Shown here: positions 9,702 to 63,139 of the stretch, piece after piece | Layout of the letters: the number at the start of each line of letters is the position of its first letter | Numbering within the stretch: position 1 is the stretch's first letter | Assembly (NCBI RefSeq): GCF_001194135.2 | Contig: NC_069007.1 | Coordinates: 12,784,544-12,848,543, forward strand | Source: Octopus bimaculoides | Lineage: Eukaryota | Direction: 5' to 3' | Length of the DNA stretch: 64,000 bases | Position numbers and translations under genes: made by a program | The notes under the pieces: generated by a model | The model's input: the letters and a program-made list of their open reading frames with translations, nothing else | Told to the model about the DNA's origin: nothing | Database searches by the model: none

Positions 9702-10595
9702 TTAAAAAATGTGGTCGACCTAACTGTGGTACTTGCCCCCACCGTTTGGAGGGTTCTAAGTTCCACTTTAAACAAGGTGAAATATATTTAAGATTAAATC
9801 AAATTTCACCTGTGCCTCGGAAAATCTAATCTATGCCATTACATGCTTAGGGTGCAGTAATAACTATATTGGCCAAACAATTATATCACTCTGTAGAAGA
9901 ACTACTCTCCACAAAGAACAAATCCGCCACCCACATTACAGACAGATACAGGTCAGTGGACACATAGAAAGGTGTGTGAGGAATCTTAATCCTAATTTCC
10001 CCCTTCTATCAATGTTCACAGATCACATCAACACAACAAAGAATGAATAAAGAGGCAATTTTCATTAATAAATATCTTCCTCAACTAAATATGAACACAT
10101 AACATAATATAGAACACCACTAATCTTCCATTTAATATCACTAACCCCCATACACCATTCATACTACAAATCCAGATCTACCCTAATTGCACCAAATCCA
10201 GAACNNNNNNNNNNNNNNNNNNNNNNNNNNNNNNNNNNNNNNNNNNNNNNNNNNNNNNNNNNNNNNNNNNNNNNNNNNNNNNNNNNNNNNNNNNNNNNNN
10301 NNNNNNNNNNNNNNNNNNNNNNNNNNNNNNNNNNNNNNNNNNNNNNNNNNNNNNNNNNNNNNNNNNNNNNNNNNNNNNNNNNNNNNNNNNNNNNNNNNNN
10401 NNNNNNNNNNNNNNNNNNNNNNNTATACAGTGGGACTGAACCCTGAACTGTGTGGTCAGGAAGCAAGCTTCTTACCACACAGCCACGCCTGCACCTGTCC
10501 ACACAGCCATGCCTAGTGGGGCTAATGGTCTGAAAACTTTCCATCTTAATCCTTATTAAGAGTTACAACATCTTAAAAACATGAATTTAACTTAC

Positions 10596-11346
10596 ATCTA
10601 TTATTTGTTGGTATTTTTGAGGTTTTGGGATTATTTTCAGTGTGGGATTGTTCCGATTTCACCTTTGCTGTTGACGCCGTTTTCGTTTTGGTCTCACCAT
10701 CACTGGGAATATCATGTAGTTCAGAATTGGTGAATGCTTTGTTAGTGGTTGCCGCTGTGGTTTGTGCTGCTGCAGGGTCATCTGAAGGTTCAGATACTGT
10801 TCCGATTCCAGCTTCATTCTGTGATGATGTCTGTTTGTAGAGTAAATTCACTGTGTCTTTCATCTCCTTTGAGACCGTTACGAATTCCTTGTTGTCCGTC
10901 ATTGATTCTATCTGGACGTTAAGGTCGGCGCCATCTTTACAGTTGGTTGAATGGTTCAACACATTCTCGTTATTGTCCATGTCATTATAACTACCTCCCC
11001 CACCACCAGTCACAACCTTGAAATTGGATTTTTTGCCACTCAACTGTGTCATTTCGCTGGTGTCACTGCTCTCGTCCCCCGACAAATTGACCTCTGGTGT
11101 ACCTCCGCGTTCGCTGCAAGGTGCCGAATCACAAGTTTCATAGTCTGAGTGGCTGCTTGACGAGTCAATCGATGACTGGCGTTCGTGGCCATTAATGTAA
11201 GACGATTTCCCTGTTGATTCATGGAGCAAAGGGTTTGATGTCGAGGAGCAGATGGCAACCGAGTTCACAACTTCCATGTCAAACATTGGCTGTTTCAATT
11301 CTTCGTGCAATTGATCCATGAAACATCGCAGGAATTCCTGAGTATC
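10596..11346 (-). CDS. USP20: USP20/33 coding exon 8 (end of QQD box plus large disordered insertion)
   Basis: Starts DTQEFLRCFMDQLHEELKQP, a family-diagnostic motif, then runs about 230 aa rich in Ser, Thr and acidic residues. Flanked by gaaAG and GTAAGT, 751 nt, phase 0-1. Confidence 0.96.
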
Positions 11347-11704
11347 CTTTCAAACAGAAGCGAAAAACAATTCATTAATAAATAGCGTGGACATTTTCCA
11401 ATGCAGGTATATGAGTGAAAAGAGAGACATATGAGGTGGTGTGGGTATGTAATGTGTACGGAAAGGAGGGTAGCTATGAGGAGGTACCAAGCAATCCGTG
11501 TGGAAGGGATTGATGGAAGAGGAAAACACGGGGAAATGATCTGAGGAGGCTGAGCTTCATAAAAGAGATGACAAAAGATTACAAGTGGTGTGATGCTATC
11601 TAACCTATGCAAGTAAGAAAAAAATGGGTTGAAAATGGTGATGTAACAGTAACAATTTCTCTTTTGGTGTGCTCACCATGTGTTCACATATTTATAGTTT
11701 AGCC

Positions 11705-16649: not shown

Positions 16650-17406
16650 TCTTGAAACGCTAAAGAGTAAATTTATTCAATAAAATTGCCATTGCCTTCA
16701 ACTGCAGCCTCCAGACACTTCAGAATCTCATGCAACTTTTCTGGGCAGTCTCCTTGTTTAAGTTGGTAAATGCTGCCATAATCCTTGCCTTCAGTTTATC
16801 TTTGGTGTTACAAGGAGTTTTGTTGGTCGCTCGCTTAACTGTGCCCCACACATAATAGTCAAGGGGGTTGCAGTCTGGGGAGTTAGGTGGCCAAATGTTA
16901 GGAGTGATGTGGTCACAGAAATTGTCTGTCAGCCATGACTGAGATCTCCTGCTTGTGTGGCATGGTGCAGAGTCTGGTTGCCAGACATAGGGTGTTCTAG
17001 CAGCCACCTTCTTGACCCAGGACAGTACTACCTCCTCTAGACACTTGATTTAGGCCTTCTTGTTGAGTCTGAAGCCGTGTGAGAAGATGAACGGAGGCAT
17101 AATGTCACCATCACTAGTGATCACTCCAAACACCCTGATGTTGACTGGATGTTTGATTTTTATCACTCAGTACAAGTTTTGGGGACAATCTGTCCACACA
17201 TTAACACCCAAACACTGAAATGTTTGTATTGGAGCTCCTGGTGCAAATGCCAAGCAGTACAGCTTGTCGTTTCCAAATTTCTAGCAGAGTGAATTGCATC
17301 AGTGGTGTTTTTCTCAGACAGTGCCCAACTGACCCTACCATAATGTGTAGTCAACAAAATCAAACAAAAATATAAAATGGCGACATTTTACATATCACAT
17401 CCTGTA
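16650..17406 (-). mobile_element. Tc1/mariner (maT/DD37D-like) transposase relic
   Basis: KHPVNIRVFGVITSDGDIMPPFIF...YVWQPDSAPCHTS...WPPNSPDCNPLDYYVWGTV. One TA-flanked TIR-like end (TA-CAGGATGTGATATG) lies at 17406; the other TIR was not recognised. Confidence 0.88.
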
Positions 17407-18570: not shown

Positions 18571-20332
18571 ATTAATATTAGTTGAGGGAGATAGTTGACC
18601 CTAGTAAATGACTGGTAGTTTATGTGTGTGTGCGCGCAGACATGGCTACGTGGTTAAGAAGCATGCTTTGGGAATGATTTGTTTGACTAGGCTCTTGAAG
18701 GCAGTGCTCCAGCATGGCTGCTGGCTGATAACTGAAACAAGTCATATAAAAGTTGTGTGTTCGCATATATATATATATAGGCACACACATGACTGTGTGG
18801 TAAGAAGCTTGCTTCCCAACCACATGGTTCCAGGTTCAATCCCACTGTGTGGCACCTTGAGCAAGCTTCTTACCACACAGTCACACCAATCCTGTTTTTG
18901 TTCCCAACTTTGACCTTCCATAAATCCTAAATGTTATTTTAGAATTTATGGGAGCAACTGTCCTTGAAGACTCATATTGTTGTTGAATACTTGAAAACAG
19001 CCAACAACTGATAAAGGGTCATTTCTCTGTGTTTACTTGTCCTGTTTTACATATTTCATGTTGTTTGCACAGTTGATGACATCCTGTACCCATATATGCA
19101 TATATATACACATATATATATATGCGCACATATACACACAACAGTAAACATGACATGGTTTAATAAAAAGACCAGTAATAGTAAAGTTATATTCCATATT
19201 ATTGTGACTTCTAATCACAATCAAAGACAACAGAACAAATATCACAAGGTAAACATCATTATTGTTGCTGCTTTGTCATGGAGCAAGGACAAATCAGGTT
19301 AGAATAATCTAGATCAGAGTTTCTTTAGCATTGTTTTCTTTTTTTTTATATATTTCCTCACCACCACGATACTCTCCTCCCCCTCTGACCTACGATAAGA
19401 CAGCTTGTTTGCACAACACACTGTATTATTGCATAACATTAACACTAACCTTATATTAATTAAACATTAGCATCGTTAAAATGAATATTAAAGAAAATAA
19501 ATCAGGTGAAAAGAAAAGAAAAAAAATGGAAAATAATAAAATTATTTTTCGACCTTAAAAAAAAAAAAAATCCCACTGGAATTCCACAACTTCCTCCTGG
19601 AATCTTGGTATGTGTCCCAGATTAATAATTGTGGGGGATTTGAATGTGATTGGTTGGTGTTCTGATGCAGAAAAACTGTACCAGTCACACAGTTATGCAC
19701 ACAGGTGAAGTCAAGCATGCACACACATACTATCACAAGGAGTCAGTCTCTCTCCCTCACTCTCCCTCTCAAACACACACAATCATAAAGAGGAAATAAA
19801 CAGAGAGAGAATGAATATATATATATGTATATATNNNNNNNNNNNNNNNNNNNNNNNNNNNNNNNNNNNNNNNNNNNNNNNNNNNNNNNNNNNNNNNNNN
19901 NNNNNNNNNNNNNNNNNNNNNNNNNNNNNNNNNNNNNNNNNNNNNNNNNNNNNNNNNNNNNNNNNNNNNNNNNNNNNNNNNNNNNNNNNNNNNNNNNNNN
20001 NNNNNNNNNNNNNNNNNNNNNNNNNNNNNNNNNNNNNNNNNNNNNNNNNNNNNNNNNNNNNNNNNNNNNNNNNNNNNNNNNNNNNNNNNNNNNNNNNNNN
20101 NNNNNNNNNNNNNNNNNNNNNNNNNNNNNNNNNNNNNNNNATATATATATATATATATATATATATAGGGGCAGGCATGGCTGTGTGGTAATTAAGCATG
20201 CTTCCCAACCACATGGTACAATGTTCAGTCCCACTGCATGGTACCTTGGGCAAGTGTCTATTACTATAGCCTTGGGTCAATCAGAGCCTTGTGAGTGGAT
20301 TTGGTAGACAGAAACTGAAAGAAGCCACCAAA

Positions 20333-50110: not shown

Positions 50111-50288
50111 ACAGTGTAAATGAGAAATCTGACTGCTATCTCTAACAGGTCAAGCGAGCCACTGCATAGGCTGTAAGACTGGCATGGGTAGCCTTTTTCT
50201 AGAAGCAGGCTACACGAGATATAAGTCATCATTAGGTGGGCTGCACGACTTAAATATTGAAGGTAAGTTTTCGTTTAGGTGTACTATA

Positions 50289-50660
50289 GGCGCAGGAGTG
50301 GCTGTGCGGTAAGTAGCTTGATTACCAACCACATGGTTCCGGGTTCAGTCCTACTGCGTGACACCTTGGGCAAGTGTCTTCTACTATAGCCTTGGGCTAG
50401 CCAAAGTCTTGTGAGTGGATTTGGTAGACGGAAACTGAAAGAAGCCCGTCGTATATATGTATATATATATATGTATGTGTGTCTGTGTTTGTCCCCCAAC
50501 ATCGCTTGACAACCGTGCCCGTAACCTAGCGGATCGGCAAAAAGAGACCGATAGAATAAGTACTAGGCTTATAAGTCATTGTGGTCGATTTGCTCGACTA
50601 AAGGCGGTGCTCCAGCATGGCCGCAGTCAAATGACTGAAACAAGTAAAAGAGTAAAAGAG
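50289..50660 (+). mobile_element. tRNA-derived SINE family B with a MIR/CORE-like CCTTGGGCAAG segment, full-length young copy (others at 31766-32133, 42025-42399, 21160-21487, 51740-52087)
   Basis: GGCGCAGGAGTGGCTGTGCGGTAAG...GGTTCAGTCC...CACCTTGGGCAAGTG, an internal (TA/TG)n tract, and the tail GAAACAAGTAAAAGAGTAAAAGAG. Confidence 0.85.
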
Positions 50661-50664
50661 TATG

Positions 50665-50830
50665 CAGAAAGTACCGCGGGTCACAGGTTTCCCATGACTG
50701 CCCTAAAATTGGGAGCGTTTACATTATCTCCCTTGGATGTTAGGCGGAAGTGACATTAAAAGAACGGCGCGGATTCTGTTTTATAAATATTGTTTAAGCA
50801 GAGTGAGAGGTGGCGGTACGGTGATCGATA
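50665..50830 (+). promoter_or_regulatory. Putative promoter and first non-coding exon of BBIP1/ANAPC5
   Basis: A locally CpG-enriched, non-repeat patch containing the ETS/GABP-type motif GGCGGAAGTG at 50743-50752. Candidate donors are AGA|GTGAGA (50803) and GCG|GTACGG (50816). Confidence 0.5.
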
Positions 50831-50997
50831 GATTTTGTGCTTAATAGGATTAGTATGTTAAACTAAGTATTGGGTAAACACAAGGAGATATATAAAGCAA
50901 AGCTGTCTTACGACACAGTTTCTTCAACTACAAGACCAATCATGTATTTGTTGTCTTAAACTATAATTGGGGTTTAAAGCAGTTATTTTTCTTGTAG

Positions 50998-51381
50998 AAA
51001 AAGACCGAAGACGGGAAATAAATTACTAGAAACAAAAGTTACAGAAGAATATTTAAACCTATCTGAATATGTCTAGTTCTAATGTGACAATCAAAGAAAT
51101 ATTGCCGAAGAAAGAGCGAGTCTACGACAGGGCAGTGCCATCTGCCATCCTCTGTAAACCGAAATTACTGCCGCTTCGGTCAGTCACTTTAGAGAAATTG
51201 GAGAAAATTCAACGTGAAGCCCAGGATATTATTAAAAAAGAAGAAATGTTACAATAATACAACCCACACACCTCATATGCATCTGTCTTTCTAACTGTTA
51301 TACACATCGCACATCTTTCTCCAAATCGCAGCATCCACTAGAATAGAACATTTCCTCTCCTCTCTTTAGATAAAGTAATTG
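50998..51381 (+). other. BBIP1: Internal exon carrying the whole BBIP1 ORF
   Basis: Acceptor ttatttttcttgtAG ends at 50997 and donor TTG|GTAAGT has its GT at 51382. No AATAAA occurs between the BBIP1 stop and the donor or in the next ~150 nt. Confidence 0.7.
51069..51257 (+). CDS. BBIP1: BBSome-interacting protein 1 (BBIP10/BBS18), complete single-exon ORF, 62 aa
   Basis: MSSSNVTIKEILPKKERVYDRAVPSAILCKPKLLPLRSVTLEKLEKIQREAQDIIKKEEMLQ. LCKPKLLPLRSVTLEKLEK matches human BBIP1 LCKPKLLPLKSLTLEKLEK, recalled from memory, at 17 of 19 positions. An in-frame TAG at 51027-51029 fixes the start codon. Confidence 0.95.
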   Translation: MSSSNVTIKEILPKKERVYDRAVPSAILCKPKLLPLRSVTLEKLEKIQREAQDIIKKEEMLQ

Positions 51382-51581
51382 GTAAGTTTTGACTATTTTT
51401 ATTTGATACTTGACTTTTAAAATTCTTTCTAAGCTTTGTGTTTTTTTTTTTATCGCTTACACGTAGTGTAGGTCTTAGTCTAGTTTTACTTAGCAACCAG
51501 TCACCAACAAATGGTGCCATGGCTCTGCACCCACATATCTCTTGCTTCAGTTAAATATCGATCACTTTTGATCACAAGAGA

Positions 51582-51614
<33 letters not shown>

Positions 51615-51907
51615 TATAATATATATACATATATTTCTTTTTCGGATAATACTGTAAACATTAACCATATATATATATATATATAATATTATCCGGAAAA
51701 GAAATATATGTATATATATTATATGCCTATATATATATACCCTTTACTCTTTTACTTGTTTCAGCACCGCCTTTAGTCGAGCAAATCGACCCCAAGACTT
51801 ATCCTTTGTAAACCTAGTACTTATTCTATCGGTCTCTTTTGCCGAACCGCTAAGTTACGGGGATGTAAACACATCAGCTTCGGTTGTCAAGCGATGTTGG
51901 GGGACAA

Positions 51908-51940
<33 letters not shown>

Positions 51941-52163
51941 CGACAGGCTTCTTTCAGTTTCCGTCTACAAATCCACTTACAAGGCTTTGGTTGGCCCGAG
52001 GCTATAGTAGAAGACACTTGCCCAAGGTGCCACGCAGTGGGACTGAACCCAGAACCATGTGGTTGGTAAGCAAGCTACTTACCACACNNNNNNNNNNNNN
52101 NNNNNNNNNNNNNNNNNNNNNNNNNNNNNNNNNNNNNNNNNNNNNNNNNNNNNNNNNNNNNNN

Positions 52164-52199
<36 letters not shown>

Positions 52200-52611
52200 A
52201 AAGAGTAAAGGTCCCCTTTGGTGATCCTCCTAGTCACAAGTCCGGGCAAGGTTGACTTATGGAAGACCAGCAGTCGCCCATGCATAGCAGTCTCCCCTCC
52301 TTACACCACCGTTGTTACCCAAGGGAAAGGCAAAGGGGCCGATACAGGTTGGCACCAGTAACGTCGCAACTCATTTCTACAGATGAGTGAACTGGAGCAA
52401 CATGAAAATAAAGTGCCTTGCTGAAGAACACTACACACAGCTCGGTCCGGTTCATCGAATGCACAATGTTACGACTGTAAGCCCGATGCTCTAACCACTG
52501 AGTCATGCGCCTTGTGTGTATGGGGAGGAACGCATGTACTAAGGGAAATCAATAATATAATCAACAATCATTTTTATTTTCATTTTATTTTAGGATCATC
52601 CAACTCTGAAA

Positions 52612-52857
52612 ATGTCTTACGTCTCATCAGGTTCAGATTTGTTCATGTTTGAACCCTCAACTAAAAGATCATCAAAGGAACAAGTCACCTCTCACAAAGT
52701 GACCTTACTTGTTCTGCTTTATGAATTCCTAAATGCTTATGAGAAAAAGTCACAAATTCGAGAACAGTACCAACAGAATTTGGACCTCAAGGTGGAAATG
52801 GATTTTACTGATGTAGAAGTGAAAGCTATTCTTACATTGATATTAGATCTTTATCAG
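52612..52857 (+). CDS. ANAPC5: Anaphase-promoting complex subunit 5, coding exon 1 (exon starts at 52594)
   Basis: MSYVSSGSDLFMFEPSTKRSSKEQVTSHKVTLLVLLYEF...ILTLILDLYQ, comparable to human KDWVTPYKIAVLVLLNEM...LLLPLLQ. Acceptor ttttattttAG ends at 52593 and the donor is CAG|GTAAGC. Confidence 0.9.
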
Positions 52858-52934: not shown

Positions 52935-53500
52935 TGAGGACATGCAAAGGCTTGAAAGAAATGAAGCAGTATGCTTTGCTGGGTGTGTACTGTCAGTGTG
53001 CATGAACAAAACAGTGTAAGCTTCTTGAGAGAAGAATTGGGCATAAGAGGCATCAGATGTGGTGTGTAAGAGAGAAGACTGTACTGGTATGGTCATGTGA
53101 TGCATATGGATGAGGACAGCTGTGGAGGGAGCCTGTGGAAAAGGTAGACCCAGGAAGACCTGGTTATGGTCATGTGATGCATATGGATGAGGACGGCTGT
53201 GGTGGGAACCTATGGAAGATGTAGACCCAGGAAGACATGGGACGAGGTGGTGATGCATGATCTTTGGATGTTGGCTTTCAGGGAGGTGATGACAAGTGAT
53301 CGAGACCATTGGCAATTTGCTGTGCTTGAGAAGACTCGTCAAGCCAAGTAAAATTGTAGTCGTGGCCATGCTGGTGGCACATAAGAGGCACCCACTACAC
53401 TCCTGGAGTCGTTGGTGTTAGGAAGGGTATCCAATCATAGAAACCGAGCCAGACCAGACTGGAGCCTGCTACAGCTCTCCAGCTTATCAGTTCCAGTCAA
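52935..53500 (+). mobile_element. RTE LINE ORF end joined to its 3'UTR
   Basis: EDMQRLERNEA...LGIRGIRCGV*ERRLYWYGHVMHM...GRPRKTW, with an internal ~76-bp duplication. It runs directly into the abundant 'GCACCCACTACACTC..GTTAGGAAGGG' repeat. Confidence 0.85.
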
Positions 53501-55330: not shown

Positions 55331-55413
55331 GGACCTGAAAAAGCTCTTCGTGACTTAATTCCCCGTGTGAAGAAAGTGACCAATGCAAAGTTGGCTGACA
55401 GATTTACAGGAAG
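55331..55413 (+). CDS. ANAPC5: ANAPC5 coding exon 2
   Basis: GPEKALRDLIPRVKKVTNAKLADRFTG(R), comparable to human GPDITLSKL...QLANSVQIR. Flanked by tatAG and GTTTGA, 83 nt, phase 0-2. Confidence 0.85.
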
Positions 55414-57157: not shown

Positions 57158-57270
57158 GTTGACTGTCATAGCTGAAGGAGGAATCCGAGCCCTCAATGAG
57201 TTTTTTAATCAATTTACAGACGATTTTTTGCATTTCTCAGAAACATTAATGCATAAATCATCATTGTTCG
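57158..57270 (+). CDS. ANAPC5: ANAPC5 coding exon 3
   Basis: LTVIAEGGIRALNEFFNQFTDDFLHFSETLMHKSSLF(G), comparable to human LKLMAEGELKDMEQFF...VHKTSVVG. Flanked by ttccAG and GTAAGT, 113 nt, phase 2-1. Confidence 0.93.
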
Positions 57271-60102: not shown

Positions 60103-60268
60103 GTCTGTTCGCCCGGAGGATGATGGTAACTTTCAACATGTTATCGTTGAGTGAAGTGGTCAACATATTCAACCGTTTTCATGCTGAAATGATGAGTATT
60201 ACTGCTGATAAAGAGAAAAATTGTAGAGACTCAGTTGGTCCGGACGATGCTTTCGGTCAGGGCAAGAC
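60103..60268 (+). CDS. ANAPC5: ANAPC5 coding exon 4
   Basis: (G)LFARRMMVTFNMLSLSEVVNIFNRFHAEMMSITADKEKNCRDSVGPDDAFGQGK(T), comparable to human GLFLRHMILAYSKLSFSQV. Flanked by tttcAG and GTTAGT, 166 nt, phase 1-2. Confidence 0.9.
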
Positions 60269-61479: not shown

Positions 61480-61540
61480 ACAACCGCCCCCTGTGACGTA
61501 TAAATCTCAGAAACAGGCAGAATATTACATAGCCAACCAG
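61480..61540 (+). CDS. ANAPC5: ANAPC5 coding exon 5
   Basis: QPPPVTYKSQKQAEYYIANQ, comparable to human LSQKQAEFFLSQQ. Flanked by caacAG and GTGAGA, 61 nt, phase 2-0. Confidence 0.92.
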
Positions 61541-63037: not shown

Positions 63038-63139
63038 GCATTCCTCATTCACCATAATGTCACTAAAGCTGCACCGCCCAATGAATTACAAGAGCGGATC
63101 AGAAACTTACTTAAGGAGAATCCAAATTTAGCAGAAGCT
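63038..63139 (+). CDS. ANAPC5: ANAPC5 coding exon 6 (gene continues past the window end)
   Basis: AFLIHHNVTKAAPPNELQERIRNLLKENPNLAEA, comparable to human ASLLKNDETKALTPASLQKELNNLLKFNPDFAEA. Flanked by ttttcAG and GTAAGT, 102 nt, phase 0-0. Confidence 0.95.

What the first reader, a model, noticed from the sequence alone, without database searches (positions are those of the whole stretch)
50998..52857. Complete BBIP1 ORF sits in an exon that appears to splice into ANAPC5: candidate bicistronic or cassette-exon BBIP1-ANAPC5 unit
Seen in the sequence: the full 62-aa BBIP1 ORF (51069-51257) lies between a clean acceptor (50997) and a consensus donor TTG|GTAAGT (51382), and the next good acceptor (52593) opens the ANAPC5 start exon. 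No AATAAA follows the BBIP1 stop before the donor or shortly after it. The spliced intercistronic distance would be 142 nt and contains one tiny uORF (MHLSF*, 51277-51294). An in-frame TAA (51376-51378) rules out a fusion protein. I see no separate promoter-like patch between the two ORFs. Inference: one promoter (~50.7 kb) yields either a true bicistronic mRNA or alternative isoforms. Skipping the exon would give monocistronic ANAPC5. Including it would give BBIP1 with its stop 124 nt before a junction, so ANAPC5 would need reinitiation or the mRNA would be an NMD target. Established knowledge: metazoan bicistronic loci are rare (SNURF-SNRPN, ASDURF-ASNSD1, MOCS2A/B), BBIP1 is a BBSome subunit needed for ciliogenesis, and APC/C drives mitotic exit and has been linked to cilium disassembly. 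I know of no described BBIP1-ANAPC5 coupling.
Basis: partly seen in the sequence, partly recalled or inferred. Interest (0 to 1): 0.88.

Follow-up and report, generated by a model that had tools for sequence, protein, structure and literature searches.

The report
BBIP1–ANAPC5 bicistronic gene in cephalopods
In octopus and cuttlefish the small cilia protein BBIP1 is encoded in the first exon of the gene for the cell-division protein ANAPC5, so one spliced mRNA carries both reading frames; this is a real, conserved and apparently undescribed animal bicistronic gene.

Summary
The window is Octopus bimaculoides chromosome DNA. The ORF at 51069-51257 is a full-length BBIP1/BBS18 (E 1.5e-15 to the bovine BBSome subunit). 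The exon at 52594-52857 opens the annotated ANAPC5 CDS.

The key test came from cuttlefish RNA-seq assemblies (Sepia esculenta, S. pharaonis; more than 100 runs). These are about 4.5 kb spliced transcripts: leader, BBIP1 ORF, 170-173 nt spacer, then an intronless 762-aa ANAPC5 ORF. The junction sits exactly on a genomic GT donor and AG acceptor 6.4 kb apart.

The O. vulgaris evidence-based gene model uses the orthologous 51381>52594 junction. Argonauta keeps the same layout. Oyster ANAPC5 transcripts and a chiton ANAPC5 locus lack BBIP1.

BBIP1 is under strong purifying selection (dN/dS about 0.05). The assembly gap lies inside the intron and is harmless.

In cuttlefish BBIP1 is in exon 1, so the cassette-exon alternative is disfavoured, and the 50997 acceptor is unverified. 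How ANAPC5 is translated is inferred, not shown; reinitiation is most likely.

No paper found describes this. It is a new member of a known kind, of moderately high interest.

The parts
50745..50783 (+). Conserved core-promoter patch (ETS-like CGGAAGTGA ... GGCGCGG); probable transcription start region at about 50778-50785
   Evidence: The motif CGGAA[G/A]TGA followed by GGCGCG is shared by O. bimaculoides, O. vulgaris and the cuttlefish-like genomic contig L017. Four independent Sepia transcript assemblies begin within about 4 nt of each other at the GGCGCG. The TSS in octopus is inferred by homology, not shown.
50785..51068 (+). Putative 5' leader of exon 1, about 285 nt, with two tiny uORFs (ATG 50855, 3 codons; ATG 50942, 5 codons).
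   Evidence: By analogy with cuttlefish, the 363-nt leader there is collinear with the genome, so there is no intron. The acceptor is weaker in O. vulgaris.
51069..51257 (+). BBIP1/BBS18 coding sequence: 62 codons plus TAA, in a single exon
   Evidence: PDB 6vbu E 1.5e-15, Pfam PF14777. The ORF is intact in O. vulgaris, Argonauta and Sepia. dN/dS is 0.04-0.06.
51258..51381 (+). 3' part of exon 1, forming the first 124 nt of the intercistronic spacer; contains the uORF MHLSF* (51277-51294); ends at the donor TTG|GTAAGT
   Evidence: The donor is identical in O. vulgaris and is used by its gene model. An equivalent donor is verified by transcripts in cuttlefish (TAG|GTAAAG).
51179..51341 (+). Possible optional internal intron ('exitron', CG|GTCAGT ... 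CTAG|AA) that would remove BBIP1 codons 38-62
   Evidence: Deduced from the O. vulgaris annotated 68-aa model P0005 (...LLPLR|IEHFLSSLDKVIG|LSSSENV...). No direct RNA evidence was seen here.
51382..52593 (+). Intron 1 (GT 51382-51383 ... AG 52592-52593), rich in repeats and microsatellites; contains the assembly gap at 52088-52163
   Evidence: The O. vulgaris orthologous intron is 1267 nt and gap-free.
52594..52611 (+). Last 18 nt of the intercistronic spacer, at the start of exon 2
52612..52857 (+). ANAPC5 coding exon 1 (aa 1-82), with donor CAG|GTAAGC
   Evidence: The annotated CDS start of XP_014787767.1 maps here. It is 87% identical to the Sepia ANAPC5 N-terminus.
55331..55413 (+). ANAPC5 coding exon 2
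   Evidence: tblastn plus GT-AG model
57158..57270 (+). ANAPC5 coding exon 3
60103..60268 (+). ANAPC5 coding exon 4
61480..61540 (+). ANAPC5 coding exon 5
63038..63139 (+). ANAPC5 coding exon 6; the gene continues beyond the window
   Evidence: the concatenated 257 aa are 100% identical to P0010

Best explanation
In coleoid cephalopods, including O. bimaculoides, BBIP1 and ANAPC5 form one transcription unit.

- A single TATA-less, ETS-type promoter at about 50.75-50.78 kb drives the primary transcript.
- Exon 1 holds a roughly 285-nt leader, the whole intronless BBIP1 ORF and 124 nt of trailer.
- Exon 1 is spliced (51381>52594) to the exon that begins 18 nt before the ANAPC5 start codon.
- The mature mRNA is therefore bicistronic: BBIP1 (62 codons), a 142-nt unstructured spacer, then ANAPC5 (759 codons).

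Proposed translation. BBIP1 is read by ordinary cap-dependent scanning. ANAPC5 is most likely reached by ribosomes that terminate at the BBIP1 stop, or at the tiny uORF just after it, resume scanning and reinitiate. Ribosomes that leak past the BBIP1 AUG probably contribute a share.

What is shown: both protein identities; the splice sites; the bicistronic spliced mRNA in two Sepia species; the shared junction in the O. vulgaris model; synteny in Argonauta; purifying selection on BBIP1.

What is inferred: use of the junction in O. bimaculoides itself; the TSS position; the translation mechanism; and the origin. The intronless BBIP1 CDS suggests a retrocopy landed in the ANAPC5 5' exon in a cephalopod ancestor.
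For: (1) BBIP1 identity.

(2) ANAPC5 identity. The window exons are 100% identical to XP_014787767.1. The Sepia downstream ORF matches human APC5 at E 4e-122 over nearly the full length.

(3) Bicistronic spliced transcripts L001-L010, L018 and L019.
- BBIP1 P0003 is indexed in 169 blocks, 120 of them with contigs of 2-5 kb.
- All 24 longest contigs carry ANAPC5 downstream, and all 24 longest ANAPC5 (P0049) contigs carry BBIP1 upstream.
- Runs are identified as Sepia esculenta and S. pharaonis, from independent laboratories.

(4) The junction coincides with genomic splice signals.
- Acceptor: T-rich tract then CAG|GTATTGG in L011 (100% identical to the transcript) and in L017.
- Donor: TAG|GTAAAG in L017.
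- The two sites are 6.4 kb apart on the same strand.
- This excludes assembly chimeras.

(5) The O. vulgaris model P0005 reads through the orthologous donor into the ANAPC5 exon. The neighbouring ANAPC5 model is N-terminally truncated to 697 aa. That annotation used Iso-Seq and RNA-seq through PASA, TransDecoder and EVM (PMC10700109).

(6) Argonauta shows BBIP1, a GTAAGC donor, and ANAPC5 exon 1 1.4 kb downstream.

(7) BBIP1 dN/dS is 0.04 (Octopus pair) and 0.056 (Sepia versus L017). Synonymous sites are saturated between octopus and cuttlefish while dN is 0.13.

(8) No canonical poly(A) hexamer lies between the BBIP1 stop and the donor, and none near the donor is conserved.

(9) All upstream ORFs end before the ANAPC5 AUG. 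The spacers are AUG-poor over the last 105-133 nt and fold no better than shuffles (z +1.4 and +1.2).

(10) The only BBIP1-family proteins found for cephalopods in a database of 5.8 billion proteins are these loci.
Against: - No O. bimaculoides RNA was available. The exact 62-aa protein is not on record in any transcript assembly, so the junction in the window species rests on conservation.
- Short-read de Bruijn contigs prove local continuity. They do not prove that single molecules run from the BBIP1 AUG to the ANAPC5 ORF. An internal TSS after the BBIP1 ORF for part of the ANAPC5 mRNAs cannot be excluded.
- A short BBIP1-only mRNA with intronic polyadenylation also cannot be excluded. 49 of the 169 blocks hold only contigs shorter than 2 kb, and these were not inspected.
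- Reading only the 24 longest contigs favours the longest isoform.
- Reinitiation after 62-68 codons is usually inefficient.
- AUGs are not depleted in the BBIP1 ORF or the spacer, so neither reinitiation nor leaky scanning has a positive sequence signature.
- In Argonauta the sequence just upstream of the ANAPC5 ATG is a C/A-rich low-complexity repeat with no obvious polypyrimidine acceptor.
Confidence: 0.78

Rival explanations
1. Two overlapping transcription units. BBIP1 mRNAs mostly end at an unconventional poly(A) site in intron 1. Most ANAPC5 mRNAs start at an internal TSS in the 3' part of exon 1 and share its donor. The bicistronic molecule is then a minor read-through species that short-read assemblers stitch together.
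For: - Short-read contigs cannot phase the TSS with the junction.
- 49 of the 169 blocks with BBIP1 have only contigs shorter than 2 kb.
- O. vulgaris has an AATAAA 172 nt past the donor.
Against: - If intronic read-through were abundant, the assembly graph would branch at the donor and contigs would break there. 48 of 48 inspected contigs run through the splice.
- No inspected contig starts after the BBIP1 ORF.
- The AATAAA near the O. vulgaris donor is absent in O. bimaculoides. No PAS hexamer lies within about 1.1 kb of the BBIP1 stop in the window.
- The spacer is only 124-147 nt of A/T-rich sequence with no promoter-like motif.
Confidence: 0.12
2. Cassette-exon model. A non-coding exon near 50.8 kb splices either to the BBIP1 exon (acceptor 50997) or directly to the ANAPC5 exon (52594). 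This would give alternative BBIP1-containing and monocistronic ANAPC5 isoforms.
For: - A good-looking acceptor (TTATTTTTCTTGTAG|A) is present at 50997.
- A weak donor (GAG|GTGGCG) lies near 50809.
- Nothing excludes it in octopus.
Against: - In cuttlefish the transcript 5' end is collinear with the genome through the BBIP1 ORF, so BBIP1 is in the first exon.
- The 50997 acceptor is degraded to ACAAG in O. vulgaris, with a 4-nt indel just after it.
- No BBIP1-less ANAPC5 contig appears among the 24 longest in Sepia, although such an isoform (about 3.8 kb) would rank there.
Confidence: 0.07
3. The BBIP1 ORF is only a regulatory uORF or a decaying relic whose peptide does not matter. The functional BBIP1 would be encoded elsewhere.
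For: - It sits in a 5' leader like a uORF.
- It is not annotated in the O. bimaculoides record.
Against: - dN/dS is 0.04-0.06, and the reading frame is intact across octopods and cuttlefish with saturated synonymous sites.
- It aligns over its full length to the BBSome subunit in solved structures.
- No other cephalopod BBIP1 was found.
Confidence: 0.02
4. Artefact: a scaffold misjoin at the gap, or chimeric transcript assemblies.
For: There is a gap at 52088-52163 between the two exons.
Against: - Gap-free orthologous loci exist in three other assemblies.
- The junction lies exactly on GT/AG sites.
- The result is reproduced in more than 100 runs from two species.
Confidence: 0.01

Closest known systems
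Vertebrate bicistronic loci in which a 5'-leader ORF encodes an independent conserved small protein (ASDURF-ASNSD1, MIEF1 microprotein-MIEF1, SNURF-SNRPN); named from my own knowledge, not tested here
   Same: - One capped, spliced and polyadenylated mRNA.
- A 60-100 codon upstream ORF encoding a real subunit of a protein complex.
- A non-overlapping downstream main ORF, with no fusion protein.
   Different: - The upstream protein here is an ancient, widely conserved gene (BBIP1) that is free-standing in vertebrates. It appears to have moved into another gene's leader.
- The downstream cistron is an essential APC/C subunit.
- The two products belong to unrelated complexes.
- The arrangement is lineage-specific: seen in coleoids, not in the oyster transcripts or the chiton locus examined.
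Green-algal conserved bicistronic loci translated by leaky scanning (PMC7896298, PMC11892635)
   Same: - Two conserved protein ORFs on one mature mRNA.
- A short ORF1 and a short spacer.
- Conservation over hundreds of millions of years.
   Different: - The algal model relies on a weak ORF1 Kozak context and on depletion of AUGs in ORF1.
- Here the BBIP1 AUG has A at -3.
- Internal and spacer AUGs are at the shuffled expectation.
- Pure leaky scanning is therefore not supported.
Insect di- and tricistronic mRNAs (for example the silkworm tricistronic cytokine mRNA, PMC2978622; Drosophila dicistronic genes, from my own knowledge)
   Same: A mature animal polycistronic mRNA read by context-dependent scanning or reinitiation.
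   Different: This is a different phylum and a different gene pair. No mollusc example was found in the searched literature.
SL trans-spliced operons (nematodes, tunicates and others)
   Same: Two genes share one promoter and one primary transcript.
   Different: Operon transcripts are resolved into monocistronic mRNAs by trans-splicing and polyadenylation. Here the mature mRNA keeps both ORFs, and the downstream ORF's exon is cis-spliced to the BBIP1 exon.
Conjoined or read-through genes
   Same: The transcript joins the coding regions of two genes through cis-splicing.
   Different: Read-through transcripts are normally minor isoforms alongside independent mRNAs of each gene. Here no independent 5' exon for ANAPC5 and no independent 3' end for BBIP1 was found.

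Membership tests
BBIP1/BBS18 (Pfam PF14777, BBSome subunit) | Sequence homology over the whole small protein, including the conserved LCKPKLLPL(K/R)S(L/V)TLEKLE core | tested here: met
   phmmer against PDB 6vbu chain 0 gives E 1.5e-15 over residues 5-61 of 62. Human 6xt9_J gives E 2.1e-12. PF14777 is assigned.
BBIP1/BBS18 (Pfam PF14777, BBSome subunit) | Physical incorporation into the BBSome, and a role in ciliary function | not testable with these tools
   Needs co-purification or a knock-down in a cephalopod.
ANAPC5/APC5 (Pfam Apc5_N PF21371 + ANAPC5 PF12862) | Full-length homology to the APC/C subunit 5 | tested here: met
   - The window exons are 100% identical to XP_014787767.1 'anaphase-promoting complex subunit 5 [Octopus bimaculoides]'.
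- The Sepia orthologue matches human APC5 (5g04_O) at E 4e-122, residues 71-753 against 58-746.
- Exon 1 alone gave no PDB hit.
Eukaryotic bicistronic mRNA (two independent protein ORFs on one mature transcript) | Both complete ORFs are present, non-overlapping and in the same orientation on one spliced transcript | tested here: met
   - Met in Sepia esculenta and S. pharaonis transcript assemblies, with the junction on genomic GT/AG sites.
- For O. bimaculoides it is inferred from conserved sites and the O. vulgaris model.
- Caveat: these are short-read assemblies, not single molecules.
Eukaryotic bicistronic mRNA (two independent protein ORFs on one mature transcript) | Both ORFs encode functional proteins under selection | tested here: met
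   BBIP1 dN/dS is 0.04-0.06. ANAPC5 is conserved over its full length.
Eukaryotic bicistronic mRNA (two independent protein ORFs on one mature transcript) | Both ORFs are translated from that same mRNA | not testable with these tools
   Needs Ribo-seq, proteomics or reporter assays.
Eukaryotic bicistronic mRNA (two independent protein ORFs on one mature transcript) | Absence, or minor role, of monocistronic mRNAs for either gene | tested here: inconclusive
   None was seen among 48 long contigs. However, only the longest contigs were read, and BBIP1-only contigs shorter than 2 kb were not inspected.
Leaky-scanning bicistron (green-algal type) | Weak ORF1 start context, and depletion of AUGs between the ORF1 start and the ORF2 start | tested here: not met
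   - The BBIP1 AUG has A at -3 in octopus and Sepia.
- Two internal AUGs plus 1-2 spacer AUGs are present.
- Observed counts equal shuffled expectation (P 0.30-0.66).
SL trans-spliced operon | The downstream gene's mRNA is resolved by trans-splicing of a spliced leader at its 5' acceptor | tested here: not met
   In every transcript, the acceptor upstream of the ANAPC5 AUG is joined in cis to the BBIP1 exon.
IRES-driven second cistron | A structured or otherwise specialised element in the spacer | tested here: inconclusive
   The spacers fold no better than shuffles (z +1.42 and +1.17) and show little sequence conservation between octopus and Sepia. This gives no support, but unstructured IRES-like elements cannot be excluded by computation.

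The most novel reading that the evidence does not exclude
BBIP1-ANAPC5 may be an obligate bicistronic mRNA that arose once in the coleoid ancestor, plausibly by retroposition of an intronless BBIP1 copy into the ANAPC5 5' exon with loss of the parental gene. In that case it has been kept for roughly 300 million years. An essential APC/C subunit would then be made only by ribosomes that have first translated, or bypassed, a BBSome subunit ORF. This would couple the output of a ciliary trafficking component and a mitotic-exit component, in stoichiometry or in regulation, at the level of translation.
Probability: 0.3. Interest if true: 0.8.

Novelty: new member of a known kind. Interest (0 to 1): 0.66.

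Why it matters
- It adds a clean, deeply conserved bicistronic protein-coding mRNA in a mollusc lineage. The upstream cistron is an ancient stand-alone gene rather than a lineage-specific micropeptide, and the downstream cistron is essential for cell division.
- It is a natural system for studying how metazoan ribosomes reach a second ORF after a 62-68 codon first ORF. It also bears on how such an mRNA avoids NMD, since the first stop lies upstream of many exon junctions.
- It has practical consequences for annotation:
  - BBIP1 is not called in the O. bimaculoides record.
  - In O. vulgaris it is mis-modelled as a 68-aa chimera.
  - The O. vulgaris ANAPC5 model is truncated to 697 aa.
  - BBSome-completeness surveys in cephalopods would therefore wrongly score BBIP1 as absent.
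- It dates a gene-relocation event that can serve as a rare genomic character for cephalopod phylogeny, once Nautilus, Vampyroteuthis and squids are checked.

Tried and rejected
- Exact look-up of the window's 62-aa BBIP1 in public assemblies found nothing on record, so there was no direct O. bimaculoides transcript.
- ANAPC5 exon 1 alone against PDB gave no hit. Identity had to come from the multi-exon model and the annotated protein.
- Oyster ANAPC5 transcripts (Ostrea edulis and Crassostrea virginica clusters) have 650-890 nt leaders. tblastn finds no BBIP1 in them. Their small ORFs look unremarkable.
- Haliotis: the ANAPC5 gene range was too long and no DNA was returned.
- Chiton (Liolophura): no BBIP1 in 41 kb around ANAPC5.
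- AUG-depletion test for leaky scanning: negative.
- Spacer folding for an IRES-like structure: negative.
- Rfam scan of 49-54 kb: no family found.
- CpG profile as a way to locate promoters: uninformative, because the flanking SINE-like repeats carry most of the CpGs.
- Literature searches for BBIP1+ANAPC5, BBIP1+bicistronic, cephalopod+bicistronic/polycistronic, and two cephalopod gene-modelling papers: no description found.
- Chimeric-assembly and gap-misjoin explanations were considered and rejected.
Full report
**1. Checking the observation**

- A 62-codon ORF runs from 51069 to 51257, with TAA included.
- An AG at 50996-50997 precedes 50998.
- The exon ends at 51381 in TTG|GTAAGT.
- The next exon begins at 52594, after TTTTATTTTAG.
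- The ANAPC5 ATG is at 52612.
- The spliced distance from the BBIP1 stop to the ANAPC5 AUG is 142 nt (124 + 18).
- The only AUG in that spacer opens MHLSF* (51277-51294).
- TAA at 51376-51378 is in frame with ANAPC5 across the junction, so no fusion protein is possible.
- No AATAAA or ATTAAA lies between the BBIP1 stop and the donor. The only one before the ANAPC5 AUG is at 52407, inside an intronic repeat.

**2. The assembly gap**

The gap (52088-52163) lies wholly inside the intron 51382-52593, so no reading frame crosses it. The real question is whether the two exons are truly neighbours.
- The window maps to O. bimaculoides CM046627.1, the same assembly, so that record is not independent.
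- The O. vulgaris orthologous intron is 1267 nt with no N, against 1212 nt here counting 76 N.
- The Argonauta hians locus and a cuttlefish-like long contig also span the BBIP1 to ANAPC5 exon 1 interval without gaps.
- The adjacency is therefore real.

**3. Identities**

- The small ORF aligns over residues 5-61 to bovine BBS18 in the BBSome cryo-EM structures (6vbu, E 1.5e-15) and to human BBIP1 (6xt9, E 2e-12). It carries PF14777.
- The 82-aa exon peptide has no PDB hit alone.
- Using a cuttlefish full-length protein as a guide, I found six collinear GT-AG exons in the window: 52612-52857, 55331-55413, 57158-57270, 60103-60268, 61480-61540 and 63038-63139.
- Their 257 aa are 100% identical to XP_014787767.1, 'anaphase-promoting complex subunit 5 [Octopus bimaculoides]'. 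That protein's annotated CDS starts exactly at window 52612.
- The cuttlefish orthologue matches human APC5 in APC/C structures at E 4e-122.
- No BBIP1 gene is called upstream in the O. bimaculoides record.

**4. The decisive evidence: real transcripts in cuttlefish**

- A 68-aa BBIP1 (P0003, 74% identical) is indexed in 169 blocks of public run assemblies, 120 of them with contigs of 2-5 kb.
- The 24 longest contigs all have the same layout (L001-L010):
  - a leader of about 360 nt;
  - the BBIP1 ORF;
  - a 170-173 nt spacer;
  - an uninterrupted 762-aa ANAPC5 ORF;
  - a 1.5-kb 3' UTR ending just after an AATAAA.
- Approaching from the ANAPC5 side (allele P0049, 67 blocks) gives the same answer. 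All 24 longest contigs carry BBIP1 upstream, and one (L018) is merely cut inside BBIP1.
- The runs include Sepia esculenta larvae from several studies and S. pharaonis whole animal.
- The same 90% protein cluster contains APC5 of Acanthosepion (Sepia) pharaonis.

**5. These contigs are spliced mRNAs, not chimeras**

- A genomic contig of the same species (L011) is 100% identical to the transcript across ANAPC5 exon 1. It diverges exactly at TTTTGTAAATCAG|GTATTGG, 25 nt before the ATG, and again at the exon's 3' donor.
- A 194-kb cuttlefish-like genomic contig (L017) carries the whole unit on one strand:
  - the transcript's 5' end at about 9585;
  - BBIP1 at 10001-10207;
  - the donor TTTAG|GTAAAG at 10355;
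  - a 6.4-kb intron;
  - ANAPC5 exon 1 at 16783-17054;
  - exon 2 at 19185.
- The transcript leader is collinear with the genome. In cuttlefish, BBIP1 therefore lies in the first exon.

**6. Octopods**

O. vulgaris keeps an intact 62-aa BBIP1 ORF, the identical TTG|GTAAGT donor and the TTTTAG|GAT acceptor.

Its published annotation was built from Iso-Seq and RNA-seq through PASA, TransDecoder and EVM (PMC10700109). It contains a 68-aa 'BBIP10' model reading ...LLPLR|IEHFLSSLDKVIG|LSSSENVLRIIWFRFVHV.
- The last segment is the ANAPC5 exon read out of frame, so the model uses the junction orthologous to 51381>52594.
- It also uses an internal 163-nt intron, equivalent to window 51179-51341.
- The adjoining ANAPC5 model is consequently truncated to 697 aa.

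Argonauta hians has BBIP1 (64 aa), a CCG|GTAAGC donor about 200 nt after the stop, and ANAPC5 exon 1 1.4 kb downstream, followed by collinear exons. Its acceptor region is a C/A-rich repeat and is unclear.

**7. Distribution**

- The arrangement is present in Octopodiformes (two Octopus species and Argonauta) and in Decapodiformes (two Sepia species plus one unidentified sepiid-like contig). That places it in Coleoidea.
- Oyster ANAPC5 transcripts (Ostrea and Crassostrea clusters) have long leaders but no BBIP1.
- A chiton ANAPC5 locus of 41 kb has no BBIP1.
- To my knowledge the two genes are on different chromosomes in human; this was not tested here.
- The fusion therefore looks derived within cephalopods. 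Nautilus and squids could not be examined.

**8. Is BBIP1 a real gene here?**

Yes.
- Between O. bimaculoides and O. vulgaris the conserved 54 codons show 6 synonymous and 1 non-synonymous change (dN/dS 0.04).
- Sepia against L017 shows 14 against 4 (dN/dS 0.056).
- Between octopus and cuttlefish, synonymous sites are saturated while dN is 0.13.
- No other cephalopod BBIP1 turned up.

**9. Promoter**

- A patch CGGAA[G/A]TGA ... GGCGCG is shared by octopus (50745-50783) and L017 (9562-9590).
- Four independent Sepia assemblies begin within about 4 nt at that GGCGCG.
- The proposed upstream intron (acceptor 50997) is neither needed nor supported. The acceptor is ACAAG in O. vulgaris, and cuttlefish has no intron there.

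**10. How it probably works**

- BBIP1 is the first sizeable ORF, with A at -3, and should be translated by scanning ribosomes.
- To reach ANAPC5 (also A at -3), ribosomes must pass 3 further AUGs in octopus and 4 in Sepia.
- All upstream ORFs terminate before the ANAPC5 AUG, leaving 105-133 nt free of AUGs.
- AUGs are not depleted relative to synonymous or composition shuffles. The leaky-scanning signature described for green-algal bicistrons (PMC11892635) is therefore absent.
- The spacers fold no better than shuffled controls and are somewhat less stable than the shuffle mean (z +1.4 and +1.2). They are poorly conserved, which gives no hint of an IRES.
- I therefore favour termination-reinitiation, with some leaky scanning. 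This is inference.
- Short-read assemblies cannot exclude an internal TSS for a fraction of ANAPC5 mRNAs, or a short intronically polyadenylated BBIP1 mRNA.

**11. Comparison and novelty**

- The closest known systems are animal bicistronic genes with a protein-coding leader ORF: ASDURF-ASNSD1, MIEF1-MP and SNURF-SNRPN (from my own knowledge), insect polycistronic mRNAs (PMC2978622) and algal bicistrons (PMC7896298).
- It is not an SL operon, because it is cis-spliced and the mature mRNA keeps both ORFs.
- It does not look like a minor read-through transcript.
- Full-text searches found no description of BBIP1-ANAPC5 coupling, and none of bicistronic nuclear genes in cephalopods.

**Verdict:** real, conserved and a new member of a known kind. 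Interest is moderately high, at 0.66.

Noticed in passing
window 50288-50661 and 51740-52087 (arms detected at 50304-50515 and 51881-52087): Two copies of a SINE-like repeat, each with a (TA)n/(TG)n tail, lie in inverted orientation (91-95% complementary) and bracket the promoter and the BBIP1 exon. The upstream copy is an O. bimaculoides-specific insertion, absent from O. vulgaris. The downstream arm ends exactly at the assembly gap. The upstream arm lies before the presumed TSS, so a pre-mRNA hairpin is unlikely.
   Followed up: partly
window 51599-51739: A near-perfect AT-rich palindrome in intron 1: 63-nt arms, 90% complementary, with a 15-nt loop.
   Followed up: no
window 53088-53240: A tandem duplication of a 77-nt unit (91% identical) in the intron after ANAPC5 coding exon 1. 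Similar sequence recurs in the O. vulgaris locus.
   Followed up: no
L013 (O. vulgaris OX597840.1) 10001-11637 and 11783 onwards: There is an annotation problem. BBIP1 is modelled as a 68-aa chimera (CAI-series protein, UniProt A0AA36BXS9) that runs out of frame into ANAPC5 exon 1. ANAPC5 (CAI9741813.1) is truncated to 697 aa and lacks its first exon. The intact 62-aa BBIP1 ORF is present in the DNA.
   Followed up: yes
L012 (O. bimaculoides CM046627.1), the 10 kb upstream of ANAPC5; window 51069-51257: No gene is called for BBIP1 in the O. bimaculoides record. The ORF appears to be unannotated there.
   Followed up: partly
window 51179-51341 (O. vulgaris L013 equivalent): The O. vulgaris model implies an internal 163-nt intron (CG|GTCAGT ... 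CTAG|AA) within the BBIP1 exon. It would delete BBIP1 codons 38-62 and the small uORF. In O. bimaculoides the product would be a 45-aa truncated peptide. It could be a real 'exitron' isoform or a modelling artefact.
   Followed up: partly
L020 (Argonauta hians BAAFZT010000069.1) 11620-11702: The sequence just upstream of the Argonauta ANAPC5 ATG is a CCCAACCCAG-type low-complexity repeat rather than a polypyrimidine tract, so the acceptor there is unclear. The C-terminal 499 aa of Argonauta ANAPC5 (P0011) are recorded on a different contig, while the model starting at 11703 is 871 aa. This suggests an assembly or annotation inconsistency.
   Followed up: no
L014 1-889, L015 1-858, L016 1-655 (oyster ANAPC5 transcripts): Oyster ANAPC5 mRNAs also have unusually long, AT-rich 5' leaders (650-890 nt). 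The Ostrea leaders contain an identical 65-codon ORF with no recognised homology. It is unclear whether this is a retained intron, a long UTR or another upstream cistron.
   Followed up: partly
L013 1-2766 (minus strand), about 7 kb upstream of O. vulgaris BBIP1: The upstream neighbour is a divergently oriented ubiquitin-specific protease gene (zf-UBP, UCH and DUSP domains). In O. bimaculoides the downstream neighbour of ANAPC5 is COQ4 on the minus strand.
   Followed up: no
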